Sequence record: OZ195934.1
Length of the DNA: 64,000 bases
Direction: 5' to 3' (one strand)
The notes under the pieces were generated by a model. The model saw only the letters and a program-made list of their open reading frames with translations, was not told the DNA's origin and did no database searches. Made by a program: the position numbers and the translations under genes. Shown piece after piece: positions 3,968-34,763 of the stretch (positions are counted from its first letter, which is position 1; each line of letters starts with the position of its first letter).

Positions 3968-4246
3968 ATGAAATTTCTACAAAAAATCTGGGCAGTTCTA
4001 ACAGGCGACACAACTCCACGTACACCTGAAGACATCATCGCTGATATGAACAAAGGTGCGGTTGAGCTTCGAGCGCGTTCGACATTCGATAAAGATCAAA
4101 TCGACAAGAACGTAGCAGAGCAAGCAGAAATTGCCGCAGAAGCTGCGCGTAAAACTGCCGAGCTTGACGCAATCAACACTGGTCACGCTGCTTCAGCAGA
4201 ACATGCAGATCGCGTTGCTAAACGCTTCGAAGATCTGACTGCGTAA
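3968..4246 (+). CDS. Hypothetical alpha-helical protein
   Basis: ORF, Ala-rich helical pattern, followed by terminator. Confidence 0.65.
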   Translation: MKFLQKIWAVLTGDTTPRTPEDIIADMNKGAVELRARSTFDKDQIDKNVAEQAEIAAEAARKTAELDAINTGHAASAEHADRVAKRFEDLTA

Positions 4247-7184: not shown

Positions 7185-7916
7185 ATGGAAAGAACAGAAA
7201 TCATAATTCCTACCAAGAGCATCAGAAATGCAGGTTATGAATTCGATGTAATAGATACAAGCAAACTAGATCACTTTCACGTTCGATGCGTGACAAATAC
7301 GTTATACGACAACAGCATACAAGGTTCACAACTCGACGGATTTCGTGCCGAGATTACTCTAATGGACGCAGAATCACTAATCTTCTTGAACTCAATGAAT
7401 CTTTATGCTAACTTTACTGAGTCGAACCGTGCAAATAATGGCATGAAGCGCATTAAGTCGGCTCGATATGACTATCATCATTATTATCAACAACAAGAGG
7501 ACTGGTTTAAAGGCATACTACGAAAGAACAGAGTCACCGTAAAATATCCGAACGGGGAAAAGCGAGAAAAGCTTCCTACGTTCTACACGTGCGGGTTGCG
7601 TTTATCAAACGTAAGACGTTCAGCAGATAAAGCTTGTGCCATGCTCGTACTCGATGAGAACGGGAAGCCCAAGATGTATGCGTTCGCTATCGGAAAACTA
7701 AGATACATTTTCGACGCGTACGACCGGTCAGAAAACCTAAACTGCCCCGCGCAAATCGGGAAGAAAACAGTTGACGTAATCGAGTGTTTAGATTACAATG
7801 ACGGAGACGATTGGAATGACGAAAACGAGTTCGAAGAAACGCGTAAATTAATGTCGATTCCAGATGTATCCGATTTAGACAAAGTATTAATGTCATTAGA
7901 CGAAGAAGAGTTTTAG
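7185..7916 (+). CDS. Hypothetical protein with acidic C-terminus
   Basis: 243-aa ORF. Confidence 0.65.
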   Translation: MERTEIIIPTKSIRNAGYEFDVIDTSKLDHFHVRCVTNTLYDNSIQGSQLDGFRAEITLMDAESLIFLNSMNLYANFTESNRANNGMKRIKSARYDYHHYYQQQEDWFKGILRKNRVTVKYPNGEKREKLPTFYTCGLRLSNVRRSADKACAMLVLDENGKPKMYAFAIGKLRYIFDAYDRSENLNCPAQIGKKTVDVIECLDYNDGDDWNDENEFEETRKLMSIPDVSDLDKVLMSLDEEEF

Positions 7917-7917
7917 T

Positions 7918-8211
7918 ATGAATGAAGTAACAACTTACACCGACACAAAAGAACTAGCACTAGACATCGCAGCATACGCATCACTATTAGTTAAGATGGG
8001 ATATTGCGAATGTGTTGAAAATCAAAAACTCTTTGTTGAAATGTGTAACGAAGCAGGGTTCAGAACAGTAACCGGAAAAGAATTTTCTCAAATGTCATTT
8101 CGACAGATGTTCGCTCGACTTCCAGCACGCATTAGTGAAGAAATCAAAGCACAATTCTCATGGGGTAACAACGCACCAAATGAGTCTATTCTTGAAAGCG
8201 TTTACGTATAG
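7918..8211 (+). CDS. asiA: Anti-sigma70 factor AsiA
   Basis: ASLLVKM...VENQKLFVEMCNEAG...FSQMSFRQM aligns by eye with T4 AsiA (ASILIKF...VENRANFIAFLNEIG...LNQNSFRKI). Confidence 0.8.
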   Translation: MNEVTTYTDTKELALDIAAYASLLVKMGYCECVENQKLFVEMCNEAGFRTVTGKEFSQMSFRQMFARLPARISEEIKAQFSWGNNAPNESILESVYV

Positions 8212-8218
8212 GTAACAC

Positions 8219-8512
8219 ATGGACTTCGGAAAAGCACTAGAAGCACTGAAATCAGGTCAAAAAGTAGCACGCGCAGGTTGGAACGGTCAGGGAATGTTTA
8301 TCGTTCTTATGCCCGAACTATATCTCCCATCGTTTAACACTCAAGACACGTTCAAAAAAGTAAATGATCGAACCGCGAAACACATCGGCAAAGACACTCC
8401 ACTAGACAGTCAGCCGTATATCGCTATGTTCACATCAGATGAAAAGTGGCAGCCAGGTTGGGTTGCGTCGCAAGCTGATCTTCTAAGCGAAGATTGGGCG
8501 ATTGTAGAATAA
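8219..8512 (+). CDS. tad2: DUF2829 / Thoeris anti-defence Tad2-like sponge
   Basis: MDFGKALEALKSGQKVARAGWNG, QPYI, GWVASQADLLSEDW. Confidence 0.85.
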   Translation: MDFGKALEALKSGQKVARAGWNGQGMFIVLMPELYLPSFNTQDTFKKVNDRTAKHIGKDTPLDSQPYIAMFTSDEKWQPGWVASQADLLSEDWAIVE

Positions 8513-8550
8513 AAAAAAGGGCAGTCTGCGTAATGCAAACTGCCCTTTTT
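8511..8550. terminator. Bidirectional terminator
   Basis: A8-GGGCAGT...ACTGCCC-T5 between convergent genes. Confidence 0.85.
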
Positions 8551-8562
8551 GTTGGTCACTCG

Positions 8563-9126
8563 TTATTTCTGGTCGGTTAATTTCTCTACCCTAACATCTA
8601 ACGCGTCAATGCGTTCTTTCAGCATGTCCGCCTCAGAACCAGTAAATCGGTCGCTGTTAACTGCCTCAAATTGAGTTTGCACTTTAGCAAGTTCAGCTTC
8701 AAAACGTCCATCTTTCTGGTTTCGAGCATCGATCTTGATACCCAATTCTTTCTGAGATTCGTATAATGCATCATACGAATTGCGCAGATTTTCATCCGCT
8801 GCTTGTGATGTTGCTCTTAGAGATTCTACACTTGATCCAAGTCTGCCGTACTGCACTAACATTTCATCTTGTTTTTTCACGATGAGAGATTGTTGTCCCT
8901 CTAGCGAAATAAGTTGCTGTGCTTGTGTAGCATCGGTTAATTTAATGTCGGTAATCTCTTTCATAATCGCGTCGTACTGCTTGATGTTGGTCTCGCCTTG
9001 CGCTTGCACTATTTCTAGTGCTTCCTGCATTCCACCATACTGAGTCGCGACGCTCAATGAAGATATTGATAGAGGAATAAGAATCGTCCCAACCACAGCT
9101 AATGCCACTTGCCAGAACTTTGTCAT
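8563..9126 (-). CDS. Membrane-anchored coiled-coil protein (possible holin or lysis protein by position)
   Basis: N-terminal TM segment plus coiled coil; lies directly after distal fibre genes like T4 t. Confidence 0.45.
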   Translation of the reverse strand: MTKFWQVALAVVGTILIPLSISSLSVATQYGGMQEALEIVQAQGETNIKQYDAIMKEITDIKLTDATQAQQLISLEGQQSLIVKKQDEMLVQYGRLGSSVESLRATSQAADENLRNSYDALYESQKELGIKIDARNQKDGRFEAELAKVQTQFEAVNSDRFTGSEADMLKERIDALDVRVEKLTDQK

Positions 9127-18611: not shown

Positions 18612-18636
18612 AAAAAAAGGACGCTATCTGCGTCCT
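18612..18636 (-). terminator. Rho-independent terminator
   Basis: AGGACGC-AGATA-GCGTCCT-T tract on minus strand. Confidence 0.8.
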
Positions 18637-19148
18637 TTAGTTTTGTTTCTTTTTAGTTTTCGTTTGAGCTTGCGAACTTCTTTACGCTTCGCGATTTTAT
18701 CAGCTCGTCGAACCGCGTCATAATCCGCAGCACAAGACGCTGCAAACGCATCGGGCTTGAATACTGGCTCTTGACCCACATATCCGAAGATCGTGCCCTT
18801 AGCTTCGTTATACGCGACGCTAGACTTGTGTTTAGGGTCTGGGTTAATGTCAACGTGTACTTCAAAGCCGCGAGGGCCGCACATTGGCTTAACTTTCAAC
18901 GCACATTCACCTGCTTTGTATACTTCGTTCATCAAGCGGCTACGAATACCATCAGTAGATGACATATAGGCTTTCTCAGTTTCGATTGTTTTGAATACTT
19001 GAGCGCCTTTACTGCCTTCCAAGTGAATTATGATTACAGTCGCGTAACTGATCATATCACTTTTTCGTTTACTGTCACACCCAACATAGATCGTGCTACT
19101 CGGGTGACTATTTTGAATCGCTGTTTCTACAGCTTCCCAATCGAACAT
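18624..19148 (-). CDS. YkuK/DUF458 RNase H-like protein
   Basis: IYVGCDS, YATVI, RLMNEV, VHVDIN, FKPDAFAASCAAD. Confidence 0.8.
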   Translation of the reverse strand: MFDWEAVETAIQNSHPSSTIYVGCDSKRKSDMISYATVIIIHLEGSKGAQVFKTIETEKAYMSSTDGIRSRLMNEVYKAGECALKVKPMCGPRGFEVHVDINPDPKHKSSVAYNEAKGTIFGYVGQEPVFKPDAFAASCAADYDAVRRADKIAKRKEVRKLKRKLKRNKTKGRR

Positions 19149-19197: not shown

Positions 19198-20631
19198 TTA
19201 TAAAGCGTATCGGTCGACACCGACAGTCTTCAGCATGATTTTCACTGGCTCAAGCTCACCACCCAACAGCGACGTTAGAATTGAAGGGCTGCAACCCGAC
19301 ACTAACGCTGTGTTCGCTTCACCTGATTTAACAGGCACGTTGTCTAGACGACCACGCAAGTTCCAGAACACTAGTTGCGGCATTTCGTAGCCCGCGTTCG
19401 CATACATGACTTTGATTGCATCGAAGTTCGTAGTGTTACGAGTATGCCAGCCACCGCCAGTACGAGCTTGATCGAATTCCATATCGCTCATGATAAGCAA
19501 TTTGGTTGGCATTTCGTCTTGCGACAAGTTTGCCGTACGAGCGCGTTCAAGAAGAACTTCGAAGCATCGTGTGATGTTCGTGCTCATATCTTCGCCAGAT
19601 CGTTGCATGTTGTCAAGACGCGACTTCAAGCTATCACCCGTCAACTTGTGAAAGTGCGGATCACTTGAGAACGAAATGAATTGATCTTTGAAGATACCCT
19701 CATTACGTTCAGCGACGTAGATGCCAAGAGACATCGCAACTTCTTTACAAGTCACACTACCACCGTGTTCACCGTTGATACCACAGCCCATAGAGCCAGA
19801 AACATCAACAACTGGAATCACGCGCTCGTCAGAGCCTTCCATGTAGTTCGGTAGAGCTTTCCATTGCTCATTTGCAACACGATGGTCACCCATTTTAACG
19901 CTGCGAACAACATCGTACGGGTAAACAGCACCTGCATTGATCTTCGCTTCACCTTTCACAAGCGATGTGATGTACTCACCGTATGCAGATTCAGCGTTAC
20001 GACCGAATGCTTTCTGATAGCGTGCAGACGCTACAGATGGCAGTTTGCCGAACTCGATCTCGTCCCAATTACGAGCACACATCTTCTGTTCAACAGTGTC
20101 AGACAAAAGAGAGATCACTTTACGCCACTGCTTCGCGTTTACACCAACCGACTTGATTGTGCGCTTGAACACGATAGCGTTTTTGCTGCGCTCACGAGGA
20201 AACCACTTAGCAGCAAGCGCGTTTTTGTCATTGACAATCGCGTGTGTCCACAGAGTGATAGCATCAGCTTCAAGAGAAGTACCGAACGCAGATACTAAGT
20301 CATCGAAACGACCAAGTTCTGGGATCTTGCGCATAACTAGACGCGCCACTTCTGGTTGTTCTTTACACAGACGTGCAAAGATTTTGCGGAAAGTACCGCG
20401 CTCACCTGCACCGCCACGCACGTCGCGAGACCATAGCAAGATGCGAGTTGCAAGCTCAGGGTTTTCACCGAATGCGCGATTAAACGCAGTTAGTGACTGA
20501 TCATTACCGCGCATAGCGCCGATAGTGAAGAACAAGTTTAGACACTCGTTACCCGAAGTGCTGTGTGTTACTGCACCGTTTGCTGTACGTGAATCGTTAG
20601 ATTGCATAGCGTTCATAAATAAACTAGTCAT
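19198..20631 (-). CDS. DUF2828 Ro60/TROVE-related protein with C-terminal vWA domain
   Basis: RDVRGGAGER, AAKWFPRE, VYPYDV, VVDVSGSM (MIDAS), SDMEFD, LVFWNL; GGAG SD before ATG 20631. Confidence 0.85.
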   Translation of the reverse strand: MTSLFMNAMQSNDSRTANGAVTHSTSGNECLNLFFTIGAMRGNDQSLTAFNRAFGENPELATRILLWSRDVRGGAGERGTFRKIFARLCKEQPEVARLVMRKIPELGRFDDLVSAFGTSLEADAITLWTHAIVNDKNALAAKWFPRERSKNAIVFKRTIKSVGVNAKQWRKVISLLSDTVEQKMCARNWDEIEFGKLPSVASARYQKAFGRNAESAYGEYITSLVKGEAKINAGAVYPYDVVRSVKMGDHRVANEQWKALPNYMEGSDERVIPVVDVSGSMGCGINGEHGGSVTCKEVAMSLGIYVAERNEGIFKDQFISFSSDPHFHKLTGDSLKSRLDNMQRSGEDMSTNITRCFEVLLERARTANLSQDEMPTKLLIMSDMEFDQARTGGGWHTRNTTNFDAIKVMYANAGYEMPQLVFWNLRGRLDNVPVKSGEANTALVSGCSPSILTSLLGGELEPVKIMLKTVGVDRYAL

Positions 20632-20667
20632 TGCTGTAAGCTCCAAATATCAAGGATCAGAAAAATA

Positions 20668-21258
20668 ATGTTTCATATTGTATATCAAATAACAAATTTA
20701 ATAAACAACAAAATTTACGTCGGTAAGCATTCAACCGAAAACATTCATGACGAATACATGGGTTCGGGAAAGCTTTTGCTCAGAGCCATTAAAAAGTATG
20801 GCAAGGAGAATTTCACAAAAGACATACTGTTCGTATCATTAGACGAAAAGGATGCATATAAAGCAGAACATGAGATCGTGAATGAAGATTTTGTTCTCCG
20901 TGAAGACACATATAATCTCAAAGTTGGCGGTCTTGGTGGATCATCAGGAATAGAATCTCCATGCAAAGGTCGTCAACTGAGTGAAGATACTAAACTAAAA
21001 ATGAGAAAAAGTAAACAATTTTCTCAAAAACATTTAGATTATCTCTCAACTAAATTATCTGAGTACAACAAATCTAGACAAGGTGTTCAAAGAGACGATC
21101 TAAAGGGTAACTCAAACCCAATGCATCGAGGTAATTGGCATACACCCCACGGAATATTTGAAACATCAAGCGAAGCAGCGTGTGCCATAAAATGTAGTCA
21201 ATCAACAATTGTTAGACGTTGCAAAAATCCAAATTTTGAGGATTGGTACATCAAATAA
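20668..21258 (+). mobile_element. Free-standing GIY-YIG (Seg-like) homing endonuclease
   Basis: IVYQITNLINNKIYVGKH, YMGSG, YNL; AT-rich, antisense to neighbours. Confidence 0.88.
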
Positions 21259-27556: not shown

Positions 27557-27666
27557 GAGTGTCGTTTATACCGCGTCTCCAAGACCTGAGATACCAACTC
27601 AGCATGGGATTCGAACCCACCGACGTTTCTTGTATCGAAAGAAATTTTAAATTGCTGTAAACACTC
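27557..27666 (-). ncRNA. Circularly permuted tRNA-like RNA E3 (YrlA-like topology)
   Basis: GAGTGT-T-TACAGCAA, anticodon-like hairpin, GTGGG TTCGAAT CCCAT T-arm, loop-closed acceptor, D-like hairpin, AAACG-ACACTC. Confidence 0.8.
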
Positions 27667-27675
27667 TTAGTATTT

Positions 27676-27749
27676 TGGCTGGGGATAACGGACTCGAACC
27701 GATACTGCGAAAGTCAAAGTTTCGTATGCTGCCATTACATCAATCCCCT
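27676..27749 (-). tRNA. tRNA-Gln(TTG)
   Basis: Cloverleaf, loop CTTTGAC, CCA. Confidence 0.92.
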
Positions 27750-28250: not shown

Positions 28251-28340
28251 AAGATAACTCTTTGTATTAAGACACTGTAATCGTTTGGTTTTTTCTTCAA
28301 ATAAAAAATACTGGTTTGTTTGCAGAATGATTACTATCTT
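28251..28340 (-). ncRNA. Motif RNA E5 (CTGCAAAC subtype)
   Basis: AAGATAG-T-AATCATTCTGCAAAC ... GAG-TTATCTT. Confidence 0.6.
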
Positions 28341-29282: not shown

Positions 29283-29369
29283 TGGTGGTTCGCCTAGGAC
29301 TCGAACCTAGAAGCCCGTTCAAGGGCGAGGGATTTACAATCCCCTGACTTACCATTAGTCTAACGAACC
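29283..29369 (-). tRNA. tRNA-Tyr(GTA)
   Basis: Loop TTGTAAA, long variable arm, CCA. Confidence 0.94.
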
Positions 29370-30985: not shown

Positions 30986-31100
30986 TGGCTGACCGATGCG
31001 GGACTCGAACCCACGACCACGTGCTTAACAGGCAATTAGAAATGCGGTAGCGATACTTATCAATATCATTTACGTGCTCTACCACTGAGCTAATCGGTCA
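30986..31100 (-). ncRNA. tRNA-Asn(GTT)-like RNA with 38-nt insertion after nt 28
   Basis: Removing 31035-31072 restores CGTGC-CTGTTAA-GCACG arm; 8-bp acceptor, G73, CCA. Confidence 0.8.
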
Positions 31101-32623: not shown

Positions 32624-32989
32624 TTATGTTTCTAGCCATCTACCAATCTTTGCAGCGAAGATGTTTTCTTCTTCGTTGATTAGCGCAGTCGATTTCATTT
32701 GATGAAACATATCTTGCTTGTGAAGCGTATCAAGTTTGACTGCACATTGCAACAACTCTTTTACGCTTCGCATAATTTCTTCTGAATCAAGCTGCGACGT
32801 TTCAGGATGATAAATCAAATTCTGAAGCACAGCTTCTATGTTGCCGTAACAACCCATACCAATAAAATTGATGATAAGTCGATACTGCATTTCTACTGAG
32901 AATGAACAATGCTTGCGCAAATTGCGCTTAACGACTTCACATACTAGCAACTTCTCTTCGAGTTCTTGCTTTATTGCTGTAAACTTCAT
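32624..32989 (-). CDS. Hypothetical protein
   Basis: 121-aa ORF with GAGGTG SD. Confidence 0.65.
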   Translation of the reverse strand: MKFTAIKQELEEKLLVCEVVKRNLRKHCSFSVEMQYRLIINFIGMGCYGNIEAVLQNLIYHPETSQLDSEEIMRSVKELLQCAVKLDTLHKQDMFHQMKSTALINEEENIFAAKIGRWLET

Positions 32990-33005: not shown

Positions 33006-33128
33006 TGGTGGAGAGTGCGGGATTCGAACCACGCGGCCAAAAGATTTACTTAGTTAGTGTTTGCAGCATGAATACTTGACAATATTCTGTCAACGTTCTT
33101 TTGCTCTACCAGACTGAGCTAACTCTCC
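33006..33128 (-). ncRNA. tRNA-Tyr(GTA)-like RNA with ~45-nt insertion in anticodon loop
   Basis: Canonical acceptor, D and T arms; AAAGA/TCTTT stem enclosing 52 nt that end AAGTAAA. Confidence 0.8.
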
Positions 33129-33140
33129 ATTTAAAACACA

Positions 33141-33264
33141 TTGAGCAGGGTGCAGGATTCGAACCTGCGTCACGATCTTAGAATGATATGCTGTTTGGGT
33201 TGCTGAATACAAGCTATACAACTTGCGTTTATGCTACGTGTGCTAGCCACTACACCAACCCTGC
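33141..33264 (-). ncRNA. tRNA-Arg(TCT)-like RNA with 49-nt insertion after nt 28
   Basis: Removing 33188-33236 gives CGATC-ATTCTAA-GATCG; ends CAA; 17-bp flanking IR. Confidence 0.8.
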
Positions 33265-33517: not shown

Positions 33518-33639
33518 TGGTCGTGCGTACTAGAATCGAACTAGTCCTACGATCTCCTAATGATATGCGTTATTGGTTGCTGAATACTTACTTGTCAGTA
33601 AGCGTTATGCTACGTGTGCTGCCACTACACCAACGCACG
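33518..33639 (-). ncRNA. tRNA-Leu(TAG)-like RNA with 48-nt insertion after nt 28
   Basis: Removing 33565-33612 gives CGATC-ATTAGGA-GATCG; ACCA end; 21-bp perfect flanking IR. Confidence 0.8.
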
Positions 33640-33921: not shown

Positions 33922-34046
33922 ATCTTAGCAGCTTTTTCGCTGAAGTCAAACACTTTTTTCAAATTTCTTTCATCGAATCAAGAGTTTGTGTTGCTGTCTC
34001 TCGACTCGATGAAATACATTCTACAGGAAAACAAAGCGAAGTCAAC
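33922..34046 (-). promoter_or_regulatory. Two tandem early promoters heading the ncRNA array
   Basis: TTTGAC-17-TAAGAT (33922-33950) and GTTGAC-17-TAGAAT (34018-34046). Confidence 0.75.
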
Positions 34047-34063: not shown

Positions 34064-34315
34064 TTACGATTGAATGATAATACCGCTTTCCGTCTCACCG
34101 CGCTCAAGAGCTGCGTGCTTAATCTGTAGTTGTGCTACTGCTTGTTGAAGTTCTGTGATCGTCTGATCATATAGCTTCATGTTGCTTTGCATGTGTTTAA
34201 TCTGATCGCTCTGCAAACCAACGATATAGGTAAGCAAGATGATGCTTTCATTATCTTGCAGTTCTTCACCGTCGTTGTATTTCTTCAGAACAGATTGGAT
34301 TGTAATATCAGCCAT
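34064..34315 (-). CDS. Coiled-coil hypothetical protein
   Basis: ORF from MADITIQ. Confidence 0.6.
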   Translation of the reverse strand: MADITIQSVLKKYNDGEELQDNESIILLTYIVGLQSDQIKHMQSNMKLYDQTITELQQAVAQLQIKHAALERGETESGIIIQS

Positions 34316-34763
34316 TGTTTTCAGCCCATGACAAATCGAGTGGTTCAACGTATTCGTCTACAAGTCGAACTTCGGCTTCGACGAACAAGGGAGTGATTGC
34401 ATCGTCATACGAAAGCGTGACGTGCGGAGTATAGTCAGGGTAATCGTGAGTACCACCGATAGAGATAAGGTCTTCATGACGCGCTACAAGCTCAGGACAT
34501 TTCATCTTCGCAACAACTGCGTGATTACCGTCTTGAGTTTTCCAGCAATCGATATACTCAATAGTTGCTACGAATGTCGTATCAACGGCAGGCACATCAA
34601 TTTGATTGCGACTGTATAGAACAGTGACGTGAAATTTATCTGGATCTAAAGGATTTGCTAGACGAAGCGATGTCTGCAAGCGAACTAACTCTTGTTTACT
34701 CGATTCGTCTAGTTTGATACCAACGTACGTCCCCTGACTTTCAAGGAACGTAGATAGTTTCAT
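34308..34763 (-). CDS. acb1: 2H phosphoesterase, T4 57B / anti-CBASS Acb1 family
   Basis: Two HxT motifs (FHVTVLYSR, PHVTLSY); synteny 57B-57A-1-3. Confidence 0.85.
   Translation of the reverse strand: MKLSTFLESQGTYVGIKLDESSKQELVRLQTSLRLANPLDPDKFHVTVLYSRNQIDVPAVDTTFVATIEYIDCWKTQDGNHAVVAKMKCPELVARHEDLISIGGTHDYPDYTPHVTLSYDDAITPLFVEAEVRLVDEYVEPLDLSWAENNG

What the first reader, a model, noticed from the sequence alone, without database searches (positions are those of the whole stretch)
33006..33128. tRNA-Tyr-like gene with a 52-nt anticodon loop carrying the CTGCAAAC motif subtype
Canonical GGAGAGT acceptor, D-arm, T-arm and ACCA, but the AAAGA/TCTTT stem encloses ACG-TTGACA-GAATAT-TGTCAA-GT-ATTCATGCTGCAAAC...AAGTAAA. 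The 15-mer ATTCATGCTGCAAAC matches the free-standing RNA E5 (AATCATTCTGCAAAC) at 13/15, which links the embedded and free forms directly. Intact tRNA-Tyr exists at 29283. Asn and Tyr are queuosine-family anticodons and the phage carries queE, which may be coincidence.
Basis: partly seen in the sequence, partly recalled or inferred. Interest (0 to 1): 0.75.

Follow-up and report, generated by a model that had tools for sequence, protein, structure and literature searches.

The report
Phage tRNA mimic with Ro-binding module
This is a real, conserved tRNA-shaped RNA gene of a KVP40-like vibriophage that has no usable anticodon and instead carries a hairpin-plus-CUGCAA module. That module is shared by dozens of phage tRNA-like and free-standing RNAs clustered next to a Ro60-like protein gene, so it is most likely a phage "Y RNA", not a tyrosine tRNA.

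Summary
Window 33006..33128 (-) scores 49.8 bits on the Rfam tRNA model, with 52 nt between AAAGA and UCUUU, and the 15-mer is conserved in related phages. The Tyr and queuosine reading does not hold. The gene is the ortholog of KVP40 'tRNA-Pseudo-4'.

It belongs to a family: four tRNA-topology copies plus free-standing forms in this window, and at least 60 more in diverse viral contigs. All share one module: a covarying helix capped by CU-GNNA-AG, then 2-4 nt, then C(A/U)GCAA. Most members are otherwise normal tRNAs with the module in the 5' strand of the anticodon stem. The target's subclass has no anticodon.

Family RNAs sit 70-250 nt from, and on the same strand as, a DUF2828 protein gene. 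My model of the window's copy (19201..20631, -) matches Ro60 over its full length. In 80 loci chosen by that protein alone, ACAGCAA is about 4-fold enriched on the gene strand within 1.5 kb.

Best reading (about 0.6): a Y-RNA-like partner of a phage Ro60-like protein. No expression or binding data exist.

The parts
33006..33128 (-). The target: 'type A' tRNA-like RNA gene, 123 nt including the encoded ACCA. It is the ortholog of KVP40 tRNA-Pseudo-4.
   Evidence: Rfam tRNA 49.8 bits. Family model R1 97.8 bits, against 47.5 or less for ordinary tRNAs. Ten orthologs average 91% column identity. KVP40 annotation.
33097..33101 (-). P1 5' strand, AAAGA (anticodon-stem position). It pairs with UCUUU at 33040..33044.
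   Evidence: 5 bp, invariant in all 10 orthologs and 100% paired, so there is no covariation either way.
33088..33096 (-). J1, an A/U-rich joiner (ACGUUGACA).
   Evidence: A/U-rich in all family members.
33070..33087 (-). P2: a 7-bp helix closed by a GNNA tetraloop (GAAUAUU-GUCA-AGUAUUC). The conserved top is C/U-U[GNNA]A-G.
   Evidence: All 7 pairs change on both sides across 26 paralogs and orthologs, with 96% of cells paired. The same holds in 40 distinct viral-contig members, 92.5% paired.
33059..33069 (-). Single-stranded AUG-CUGCAAAC, containing the family motif C(A/U)GCAA.
   Evidence: U-N-C-N-G-C-A is invariant in all 26 aligned KVP40-group sequences. CAGCAA is the commonest form in viral-contig members.
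33048..33058 (-). P3: a short variable hairpin (ACU-AACUA-AGU), followed by AAA (33045..33047).
   Evidence: Read by eye: ACU/AGU, ACUU/AAGU, ACCU/AGGU, ACC/GGU, CAUU/AAUG. The loop is 5-8 nt, so it is not an anticodon loop.
33040..33044 (-). P1 3' strand, UCUUU.
33141..33264 (-). Sister gene 'type D': a tRNA-like RNA with the same module. Its acceptor stem is extended by 13 further base pairs from the flanks.
   Evidence: R1 104 bits. The extension covaries across phages. Fold z-score -4.2.
33518..33639 (-). Sister gene 'type D2', with a 14-bp extension of the acceptor stem.
   Evidence: R1 90.4 bits..
30987..31099 (-). Sister gene 'type C': a tRNA-Asn(GUU)-like gene with the module inserted in the 5' strand of the anticodon stem. 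It is the ortholog of KVP40 tRNA-Pseudo-3.
   Evidence: Rfam 49.1 bits. R1 90.2 bits. Parsed. Counted as a second tRNA-GTT in 10.1101/2024.12.24.630238.
28262..28338 (-). 'E5': a free-standing form with a 12-bp terminal helix, then AUU-CUGCAAAC, then an A/U-rich loop. It has no tRNA part.
   Evidence: The minimum-energy fold forms the helix, but the z-score is only -0.7. The core is invariant in F86.
33968..34014 (-). Free-standing hairpin: a 17-bp stem with the loop ACAGCAACACAAA, just downstream of a promoter-like site.
   Evidence: Fold z-score -6.3. Promoter-like TTGACT-16-TAGAAT at 34045..34018.
19201..20631 (-). Gene for the proposed protein partner: a Ro60-like protein (DUF2828 plus DUF7788/vWA).
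   Evidence: Pfam 92 and 158 bits. AlphaFold2 model with pLDDT 80. Foldseek hits to Ro60/TROVE structures 9kop, 1yvr, 9l5y and 2i91, TM 0.55-0.60, probability 1.0. ACAGCAA lies between GGAG and its ATG.

Best explanation
The target is a stable non-coding tRNA mimic, not a decoding tRNA.

It keeps a full acceptor stem with encoded ACCA, a D arm and a T arm. It should therefore be cut out of the tRNA-cluster transcript and stabilised like a tRNA (inferred).

In place of the anticodon loop it carries a three-way junction: P1, then P2 (a 7-bp helix with a GNNA loop), then single-stranded AUG-CUGCAAAC, then P3.

The helix plus C(A/U)GCAA module is proposed to be the binding site for the phage's Ro60-like ring protein (window 19201..20631). 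The RNA would then play the part that Y RNAs, such as YrlA, play for bacterial Ro60: it occupies or gates the protein and tethers it through the tRNA-like domain to tRNA-handling or RNA-decay machinery.

The resulting RNP most likely serves phage RNA surveillance or counter-defence.

Shown here: the RNA structure is conserved and covaries. The module recurs in tRNA-topology, circularly permuted and free-standing RNAs. These RNAs cluster tightly, on the same strand, with the Ro60-like gene.

Inferred: expression, processing, direct binding and the downstream function.
For: 1. Structure under selection. Acceptor, D, P2 and T helices are 94-100% paired, with changes on both sides in 22 of 23 pairs across 26 sequences. 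Slid controls pair 35-46%. The result repeats on 40 distinct viral-contig members.

2. A discrete family. Model R1 scores members at 81-116 bits and ordinary tRNAs at 47.5 or less. Hits of 50-86 bits and 113-150 nt occur in diverse viral contigs.

3. Linkage when loci are chosen by the RNA. 22 of 45 positive loci encode the DUF2828 protein. The RNA gene nearest to it is a family member in 16 of 22 loci, or 10 of 14 groups after I grouped near-duplicate loci by eye. Typical distance is 70-250 nt on the same strand. Family members are only 36 of the 237 RNA genes in these loci, and 9 loci hold no ordinary tRNA at all. The anticodon-less subclass, to which the target belongs, is often the adjacent RNA.

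4. Linkage when loci are chosen by the protein. In 80 such loci, ACAGCAA within 1.5 kb occurs 84 times on the gene strand and 21 times opposite. Beyond 1.5 kb the counts are 43 and 33. 44 of the 80 loci have a near, same-strand hit, often as 2-4 tandem 'helix plus ACAGCAA' units. Several are hairpins 34-50 nt upstream of the start codon, and in the copies I read their 3' strand carries the Shine-Dalgarno sequence.

5. The protein is Ro60-like over its full length.

6. Another genus. In Aeromonas phage PX29 two members lie 2.3-2.5 kb downstream of the Ro-like gene, apart from the main tRNA cluster.

7. Co-occurrence. T4 shows no family RNA in its tRNA region. About 51 Vibrio phage records carry a close homolog of the protein and 49 carry the RNAs.

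8. Precedent. YrlA RNAs are tRNA mimics encoded within 4 kb of rsr on the same strand (PMC4201824). Thermus phage phiLo Ro60 binds two adjacent Y-like RNAs and host PNPase (PMC12135203). Bas63 gp130, the Felixounavirus homolog, counters the Ppl defence, and its authors guessed that some neighbouring 'tRNA genes' are Y RNAs (10.1101/2024.10.10.617714).
Against: - There are no expression, processing or binding data for any member.
- In this phage the target lies 12.4 kb from the Ro-like gene, so here the linkage is loose.
- The motif C(A/U)GCAA differs from the known Ro60-binding motifs GGUCCGA and GNCGAA.
- R1 found a standard-topology member in only 1 of the 80 protein-chosen loci. There the link rests on motif enrichment and on my reading of permuted and free forms by eye.
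- Many family members keep perfect anticodon arms, which a pure protein-binding RNA would not need. This hints at a link to translation or aminoacylation that the model does not explain.
- Some loci are near-duplicates, so the counts overstate independence.
- Ro-like genes often lie near tRNA clusters, which partly confounds proximity.
Confidence: 0.6

Rival explanations
1. It is an intron-containing tRNA. The roughly 45-nt module would be a new kind of small intron, removed by cleavage and nick-sealing in the anticodon stem to yield a decoding tRNA.
For: For most family members, deleting 38-54 nt from the 5' strand of the anticodon stem restores a perfect 5-bp stem and a 7-nt loop with U33 and a purine at 37. 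Many identities appear: Pro, Gln, Asp, Glu, Asn, Tyr, Thr, Lys, Gly, Ser, Met, Arg. The 5' junction is usually CG|UA. GenBank annotates a PX29 member as a two-piece tRNA. Lak megaphage tRNAs were reported to carry 'enigmatic introns' (10.1101/356790). From general knowledge, T4-like phages encode RNA ligases that seal nicks.
Against: For the target itself, removing J1-P2-J2 leaves no 7-nt anticodon loop, only a 9-bp bulged arm with a 5-8 nt loop. The same module occurs in permuted and free-standing RNAs that are not inside tRNAs. No ribozyme or group I family matched. No 3' junction sequence is conserved. The phage already has an uninterrupted tRNA-Asn alongside type C.
Confidence: 0.15
2. It is a tRNA-scaffolded decoy or shield. 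The bulky module on the anticodon arm would make the RNA, or the tRNAs carrying it, a trap for host anticodon nucleases or resistant to them, with or without the Ro-like protein.
For: Phage tRNA clusters are known to compensate for tRNA-targeting defences (general knowledge). Anticodon-like loops in type D vary fast between close relatives (UCU, UCA, UAG and 8-nt loops) on a constant body, which fits diversifying pressure. The Felixounavirus Ro-like protein is a counter-defence factor.
Against: The target has no anticodon loop to act as bait. Nothing ties any anticodon nuclease to these phages. The reading does not explain the free-standing forms or the hairpins in the Ro-like gene's leader.
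Confidence: 0.12
3. It is a decaying tRNA pseudogene, as KVP40's 'tRNA-Pseudo-4' label implies, with an accidental insertion and no function.
For: tRNAscan and ARAGORN call it pseudo or OTHER. The T stem has a bulged U in this phage.
Against: Orthologs average 91% column identity where flanking DNA is about 77% identical. Compensatory changes occur in the acceptor (U7-A66 to A-U in phage 1.081.O), in P2 and in the T stem. The insert's motif is invariant across five paralog types. The family is found in unrelated phages.
Confidence: 0.03
4. It is a miniature tmRNA-like RNA. Translation would resume at GCA of CUGCAAAC and read a short tag: GCA AAC ACU AAC UAA here, and GCA AAC CUU AAU AAC UAG in KVP40.
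For: The first two codons, GCA AAC, match my recollection of the start of the E. coli tmRNA tag (memory only, not checked here). Most type A orthologs have an in-frame stop after 3-6 codons, and one indel is 3 nt long.
Against: Position 3:70 is A-U, not the G:U that gives alanine identity. F86 has no nearby in-frame stop, and types B, C and D have none. ARAGORN and Rfam find no tmRNA. A/U-rich sequence produces stop codons by chance.
Confidence: 0.02

Closest known systems
YrlA / bacterial Y RNAs (Rfam RF02553) bound by Ro60 (Rsr)
   Same: A tRNA-mimicking domain (acceptor-like, D and T arms) joined to a protein-binding helix with a short conserved single-strand motif. Encoded near a Ro60-type gene (TROVE ring plus vWA) on the same strand, often in several copies.
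   Different: YrlA is circularly permuted: its ends lie in the Ro-binding stem and its acceptor is closed by a loop. The target has normal tRNA ends with ACCA, and a hairpin closes the binding helix. The motif is C(A/U)GCAA, not GNCGAA. The partner belongs to the DUF2828 subfamily, which Pfam does not call TROVE. The Rfam YrlA score here is 28 against 69, and that hit spans two adjacent genes.
Thermus phage phiLo Ro60 with Yrl1 and Yrl2 (PMC12135203)
   Same: A phage-encoded Ro60 with adjacent phage-encoded partner RNAs. A role in hijacking host RNA decay or in counter-defence has been proposed.
   Different: Yrl1 and Yrl2 are stem-bulge-stem RNAs with a CGAA motif and no full tRNA cloverleaf. 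Binding was shown experimentally there and has not been tested here.
Bas63 (Felixounavirus) gp130, a Ro60-like counter to the Ppl defence (10.1101/2024.10.10.617714)
   Same: The window's protein is 45% identical to the homologous protein of the related Felixounavirus KhF3. That gene sits directly upstream of a tRNA cluster. The authors guessed that some of the 'tRNA genes' are Y RNAs.
   Different: No RNA partner was identified there. In Felixounaviruses the candidate RNAs I see are permuted or free ACAGCAA units, not the tRNA-topology form.
KVP40 tRNA-Pseudo-3, -4 and -5, and intron-annotated tRNAs of Aeromonas phage PX29
   Same: These are the same genes: the target is the ortholog of Pseudo-4.
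   Different: Those labels treat the genes as defective or intron-bearing tRNAs. Two further KVP40 copies (L002:3611-3733 and 3998-4123) are not annotated at all.
T4 stable RNAs species 1 and 2 (rnaC, rnaD)
   Same: Small stable RNAs of unknown function at the end of a T4-type tRNA cluster. rnaC has a T arm, an acceptor-like stem and a hairpin with a CGUCAA loop.
   Different: They have no C(A/U)GCAA motif and R1 does not match them.

Membership tests
tRNA (Rfam RF00005) | Cloverleaf with acceptor, D and T arms that scores above the gathering threshold | tested here: met
   49.8 bits against 29. The helices are 100% paired in orthologs, apart from a bulged U in the T stem.
tRNA (Rfam RF00005) | A 7-nt anticodon loop with U33 and a readable anticodon | tested here: not met
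   52 nt lie between the stem strands, and no sub-hairpin has a 7-nt loop. The P3 loop is 5-8 nt in orthologs. ARAGORN fails even with introns allowed.
Bacterial tRNA-Tyr | A class II long variable arm and a GUA anticodon in a 7-nt loop | tested here: not met
   The variable loop is 5 nt (UGGCC), whereas the phage's own tRNA-Tyr is 87 nt with a long arm. The 'GUA' lies in the 3' strand of P3 and is missing in F86.
YrlA / Y RNA | Encoded close to a Ro60 ortholog on the same strand | tested here: inconclusive
   The strand is the same, but the distance in this phage is 12.4 kb. Relatives in other viral contigs lie 70-250 nt away and 2.3-2.5 kb away in PX29.
YrlA / Y RNA | A tRNA-like domain with D and T arms | tested here: met
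YrlA / Y RNA | The GNCGAA (or GGUCCGA) Ro-binding motif in a stem formed by the two RNA ends | tested here: not met
   The motif is CUGCAA, 3' of a closed hairpin, and the RNA ends lie at the acceptor stem. The Rfam YrlA hit scores 28.2 bits against 69 and spans two neighbouring genes.
YrlA / Y RNA | Physically bound by the Ro60 protein | not testable with these tools
   Needs a gel-shift or immunoprecipitation experiment.
Ro60 (TROVE plus vWA) proteins, for the proposed partner | A HEAT-repeat ring followed by a vWA domain with a MIDAS motif | tested here: met
   Foldseek matches 9kop, 1yvr, 9l5y and 2i91 over the full length, TM 0.55-0.60. A DxSxS motif is invariant. Pfam calls DUF2828 and DUF7788, not TROVE.
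Group I intron in a tRNA gene | A catalytic core of about 200 nt or more, inserted in the anticodon loop | tested here: not met
   The insert is 52 nt, and no intron or ribozyme family matched at E <= 1.
tmRNA | G3:U70 alanine identity, and a tag reading frame flanked by pseudoknots | tested here: not met
   Position 3:70 is A-U. Neither ARAGORN nor Rfam calls a tmRNA. The short reading frame is not conserved in F86.
preQ1 riboswitch or queuosine-related element | A match to the preQ1 aptamer models, or a fixed UGU in a 7-nt loop | tested here: not met
   No Rfam hit. The P2 loop is GNNA with a variable second base.

The most novel reading that the evidence does not exclude
A widespread and so far undescribed class of phage RNAs carries one portable module, a helix plus C(A/U)GCAA, that recruits a Ro60-like protein. 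The module appears in three settings: inside otherwise complete tRNAs of a dozen identities (in the 5' strand of the anticodon stem), in anticodon-less tRNA mimics such as the target, and in permuted or free-standing Y-like RNAs, including hairpins in the leader of the Ro-like gene itself. If true, phages physically couple a Ro60-type ring to tRNAs. Possible purposes are guarding or gating phage tRNAs against host tRNA-targeting defences, or steering host RNA decay. The protein may also regulate its own translation through the same motif.
Probability: 0.4. Interest if true: 0.85.

Novelty: new variant of a known kind. Interest (0 to 1): 0.72.

Why it matters
'Pseudo-tRNAs' and 'intron-containing tRNAs' have been noted in large phage genomes since the KVP40 genome annotation, without explanation.

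Separately, a Ro60-like protein occurs in more than 700 phage genome records. It has just been shown to counter a bacterial defence in a Felixounavirus, but no RNA partner is known.

Linking the two would name the missing partner. It would explain a recurrent annotation puzzle. It would extend the Ro60/Y RNA system to a new RNA architecture, with normal tRNA topology and in many cases an intact anticodon.

It would also give directly testable constructs, namely motif and P2 mutants, for studying how Ro-type proteins recognise RNA and why Y RNAs mimic tRNA.

Tried and rejected
- **YrlA membership.** The only Rfam YrlA hit (33070..33196, 28 bits) runs from the T arm of one gene into the D arm of the next. 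It is an artefact of tandem tRNA-like genes.
- **gp57B as a tRNA-splicing phosphodiesterase.** It is Acb1, the anti-CBASS protein (152 bits).
- **T4 rnaC and rnaD as members.** R1 does not hit them and they lack the motif.
- **Known ribozymes or riboswitches in the insert.** None at E <= 1.
- **A tmRNA-like tag.** Rejected; see the rival explanations.
- **P2 as an anticodon stem-loop mimic or TGT substrate.** The loop is 6 nt, or GNNA closed by U-A, and the base after G varies.
- **An Hfq A-R-N repeat reading of the motif.** It does not hold for most members.
- **E5 as a chance match.** I first dismissed it because it has no local hairpin and no R1 hit. I revised this once the long-range helix was seen. 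Even so, its fold is not thermodynamically distinctive and shows no covariation.
- **First degenerate viral-contig pattern scan.** It returned mostly chance hits, which the covariance model then filtered out.
- **Standard-topology RNAs in protein-chosen loci.** R1 found almost none, which forced the motif-based analysis.
- **Literature.** The KVP40 genome paper could not be opened. I found no paper describing this RNA family.
- **Neighbouring small ORFs.** The 121-aa, 182-aa, 87-aa and 79-aa ORFs gave no functional Pfam match (one weak sub-threshold hit), and their PHROG families have no known function.

Full report
**1. What is there**

The window is from a KVP40-like vibriophage. It is 100% identical over 2.5 kb to Vibrio phages D482 and 6E35.1a (Straboviridae).

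On the minus strand, 33128..33006 reads as a tRNA cloverleaf: acceptor GGAGAGU/ACUCUCC, a D arm, a T arm and an encoded ACCA. Between AAAGA and UCUUU lie 52 nt where 7 nt would be expected.

Rfam's tRNA model scores it at 49.8 bits against a threshold of 29. ARAGORN does not call it, even with introns allowed. KVP40's annotation calls the ortholog 'tRNA-Pseudo-4'.

**2. It is conserved and structured, but it is not tRNA-Tyr**

Ten distinct orthologs average 91% column identity, where surrounding DNA is about 77% identical. The 15-mer is identical in 6 of the 9 other orthologs.

Compensatory changes occur in the acceptor, in the insert hairpin and in the T stem.

The conserved helix is P2, GAAUAUU-GUCA-AGUAUUC, which overlaps it.

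The supposed GUA anticodon is the 3' strand of a small hairpin P3, which covaries: ACU/AGU, ACUU/AAGU, ACCU/AGGU, CAUU/AAUG. Its loop is 5-8 nt, and it is followed by AAA.

There is no long variable arm. In a crude body comparison tRNA-Tyr is not among the five best-matching tRNAs of the window. No anticodon can be read.

**3. It belongs to a family**

The window holds three further tRNA-topology copies: 33518..33639, 33141..33264 and 30987..31099, all on the minus strand. KVP40 holds five, of which only three are annotated.

Aligning 26 sequences of five paralog types (62% mean identity) shows one shared insert:
- an A/U-rich joiner;
- helix P2, capped by C-U[GNNA]A-G;
- 2-4 nt;
- an invariant U-N-C-N-G-C-A, read as C(A/U)GCAA;
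- a variable hairpin.

All 7 P2 pairs change on both sides, and 96% of cells are paired. Slid controls pair 35-46%.

A covariance model of the family (R1) scores members at 81-116 bits and ordinary tRNAs at 47.5 or less. T4 has none in its tRNA region.

R1 confirmed hits of 50-86 bits and 113-150 nt in diverse contigs, many over 100 kb. The covariation repeats in these members.

**4. Anatomy across the family**

In most members, removing 38-54 nt from the 5' strand of the anticodon stem, after nt 28-30, restores a perfect 5-bp stem. The 5' junction is usually CG|UA.

What remains is a canonical 7-nt loop with U33 and a purine at 37. A dozen identities appear.

A minority close the whole insert with an intact 5-bp stem and have no anticodon loop. 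The target (type A) and type B belong to this subclass.

So the family mixes seemingly complete tRNAs that carry the module with pure tRNA mimics.

**5. The protein link**

I clustered the ORFs in the positive viral-contig loci. One family stood out: a DUF2828 protein of roughly 460-570 aa, PHROG 850 'RNA-binding protein'. It is present in 22 of 45 loci.

The RNA gene nearest to it is a family member in 16 of 22 loci. After I grouped near-duplicate loci by eye, that is 10 of 14 groups. Distances are typically 70-250 nt on the same strand.

Family members are only 36 of the 237 RNA genes in these loci, and 9 loci have no ordinary tRNA at all. The adjacent RNA is often of the anticodon-less kind.

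The window encodes this protein at 19201..20631 (-). An AlphaFold2 model built on 15 homologs has pLDDT 80. It matches Ro60/TROVE-vWA structures over its full length, including a phage Ro60, at TM 0.55-0.60 and probability 1.0.

Homologs occur in 711 phage records.

In Aeromonas phage PX29 two family RNAs lie 2.3-2.5 kb downstream of the gene, away from the main tRNA cluster.

**6. The reciprocal test**

I then chose 80 viral-contig loci by the protein alone. R1 found a tRNA-topology member in only one of them.

The motif, however, is strongly enriched. ACAGCAA within 1.5 kb of the gene occurs 84 times on the gene strand and 21 times on the opposite strand. Further away the counts are 43 and 33. 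44 of the 80 loci have a near, same-strand hit.

The context is always a helix strand, 1-3 nt, then ACAGCAA, often in 2-4 tandem copies.

Some copies are circularly permuted tRNA-like RNAs with YrlA topology, including those in Felixounaviruses. Others are plain hairpins with the motif in the loop.

Several such hairpins lie 34-50 nt upstream of the Ro-like start codon. In the copies I read, their 3' strand carries the Shine-Dalgarno sequence. That arrangement suggests the protein may bind its own leader.

In the window, ACAGCAA lies between GGAG and the ATG of the Ro-like gene.

The window also has free-standing forms:
- E5 at 28262..28338;
- a 17-bp hairpin with the loop ACAGCAACACAAA at 33968..34014, with fold z-score -6.3;
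- a possible permuted tRNA-like RNA at about 27560..27683.

**7. Interpretation**

The simplest account is that helix plus C(A/U)GCAA is the recognition element of the Ro60-like protein. The target would then be a Y-RNA analogue built on an unpermuted tRNA frame.

Three published results give precedent:
- Bacterial YrlA RNAs mimic tRNA and lie within 4 kb of rsr on the same strand (PMC4201824).
- Thermus phage phiLo Ro60 binds two adjacent Y-like RNAs and host PNPase (PMC12135203).
- The Felixounavirus homolog gp130 counters the Ppl defence, and its authors guessed that some neighbouring tRNA genes are Y RNAs (10.1101/2024.10.10.617714).

I found no description of this RNA family. It is not in Rfam 15. 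A Schizotequatrovirus preprint counts type C as a second tRNA-GTT without comment.

**8. Limits**

- Nothing here shows expression, processing or binding.
- In this phage the target is 12.4 kb from the protein gene.
- The permuted and free forms were read by eye and by regular expression, not with a calibrated model.
- E5 and the permuted RNA are not thermodynamically distinctive.
- Intact anticodon arms in many members remain unexplained. They keep an intron or translation-linked reading alive for those members, though not for the target.

**9. Verdict**

The target is a new architectural variant of the Ro60/Y RNA kind. My confidence in the Ro-partner model is about 0.6.

Noticed in passing
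window 33141..33264 and 33518..33639 (-), with about 15 nt of flank on each side: The two upstream sister genes (types D and D2) have 13-14 extra base pairs beyond the 7-bp acceptor stem, giving terminal helices of about 20 bp. These extensions covary across phages (for example gagagua/uacucuc against gaaagca/ugcuuuc). In D2 the encoded ACCA is paired with an upstream UGGU. They could be RNase III-type processing sites, or the long stem may be kept in the mature RNA.
   Followed up: partly
window about 27560..27683 (-), between tRNA-Gln and tRNA-Thr: A possible circularly permuted, YrlA-like member: GAGUGUU-UA-CAGCAA, a hairpin with a 7-nt loop, a T arm, a closed acceptor-like hairpin, a small hairpin, then GACACUC pairing back to the start. 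The fold is not distinctive (z = 0.27, although my folded range clipped the 3' strand). R1 scores it at only 20.9 bits.
   Followed up: partly
window 33968..34014 (-), with a promoter-like site at 34045..34018 (-): A 17-bp hairpin with the loop ACAGCAACACAAA (fold z = -6.3), immediately downstream of TTGACT-16-TAGAAT. It may be the first element of the transcript that carries D2, D and the target. No hairpin of 10 bp or more with the motif in its loop was found in the fetched regions of the other KVP40-like phages.
   Followed up: partly
window 20631..20637 (-): ACAGCAA sits between the GGAG and the ATG of the Ro60-like gene, and its last base is the A of that ATG. In other phages, hairpins carrying the motif lie 34-50 nt upstream of the homologous start codon, and in the copies I read their 3' strand carries the Shine-Dalgarno sequence. 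This may be a site for translational autoregulation.
   Followed up: partly
window 33141..33264 (-) and its orthologs (L002:3998-4123, L003:4007-4128, L005:4017-4138, L007:4013-4137): The anticodon-like loop of type D changes between close relatives on an otherwise constant body: AUUCUAA, CUUCAAA (a UCA anticodon, which would read UGA), and 8-nt loops AUUCAUAA and AUUUCCAA. D2 has AUUAGGA or AUAGGGA. This is either relaxed or diversifying selection, and the 8-nt loops resemble frameshift-suppressor loops.
   Followed up: no
window 34308..34763 (-): The gp57B homolog next to the RNA cluster, annotated 'RNA ligase' in several records, is Acb1, the anti-CBASS nuclease (Pfam PF23474, 152 bits).
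   Followed up: yes
window 20668..21258 (+) and 18624..19148 (-): A GIY-YIG (SegE-like) homing endonuclease gene on the opposite strand abuts the start of the Ro-like gene. An RNase H-like protein (PF04308) is encoded directly downstream of the Ro-like gene, followed by a 546-aa ORF with no Pfam match.
   Followed up: no
window 32624..32989 (-): A conserved 121-aa ORF (PHROG 27428, function unknown) starts 17 nt after the target's ACCA in all KVP40-like phages checked. Its first codons, AUG AAG UUU ACA GCA AUA, contain ACAGCAA.
   Followed up: no
window 33017..33034 (-): The target's T stem has a bulged U (GCG-U-GG / CCCGC) in this phage and in XZ1, phi-Grn1, phi-ST2, CZ01 and 1.081.O. KVP40, V09, V07, VH1, VS1 and F86 have a regular 5-bp stem.
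   Followed up: partly
L236:12360-12520 (Felixounavirus KhF3); L296, L297, L298, L301 and L314 at about 7760-8900: Felix O1-type phages have 3-4 tandem units of the form AGAAGACC-NNN-ACAGCAA within about 1.5 kb downstream of the Ro-like gene. One is followed by a T arm, a closed acceptor-like hairpin (ACUCG/CGAGU) and a D arm, which is a permuted tRNA-like RNA. Rfam does not call it YrlA.
   Followed up: partly
L319:1548-1650 (Aeromonas phage PX29): A 100-nt 'tRNA-Lys', annotated as two joined pieces, lies directly after gp57B. It scores 51.8 bits on R1 but lacks P2, so it may be a different kind of interrupted tRNA.
   Followed up: no
L002:3611-3733 and L002:3998-4123 (KVP40): KVP40 has two further family members that its annotation misses. 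One overlaps the predicted ORF KVP40.0319.
   Followed up: yes
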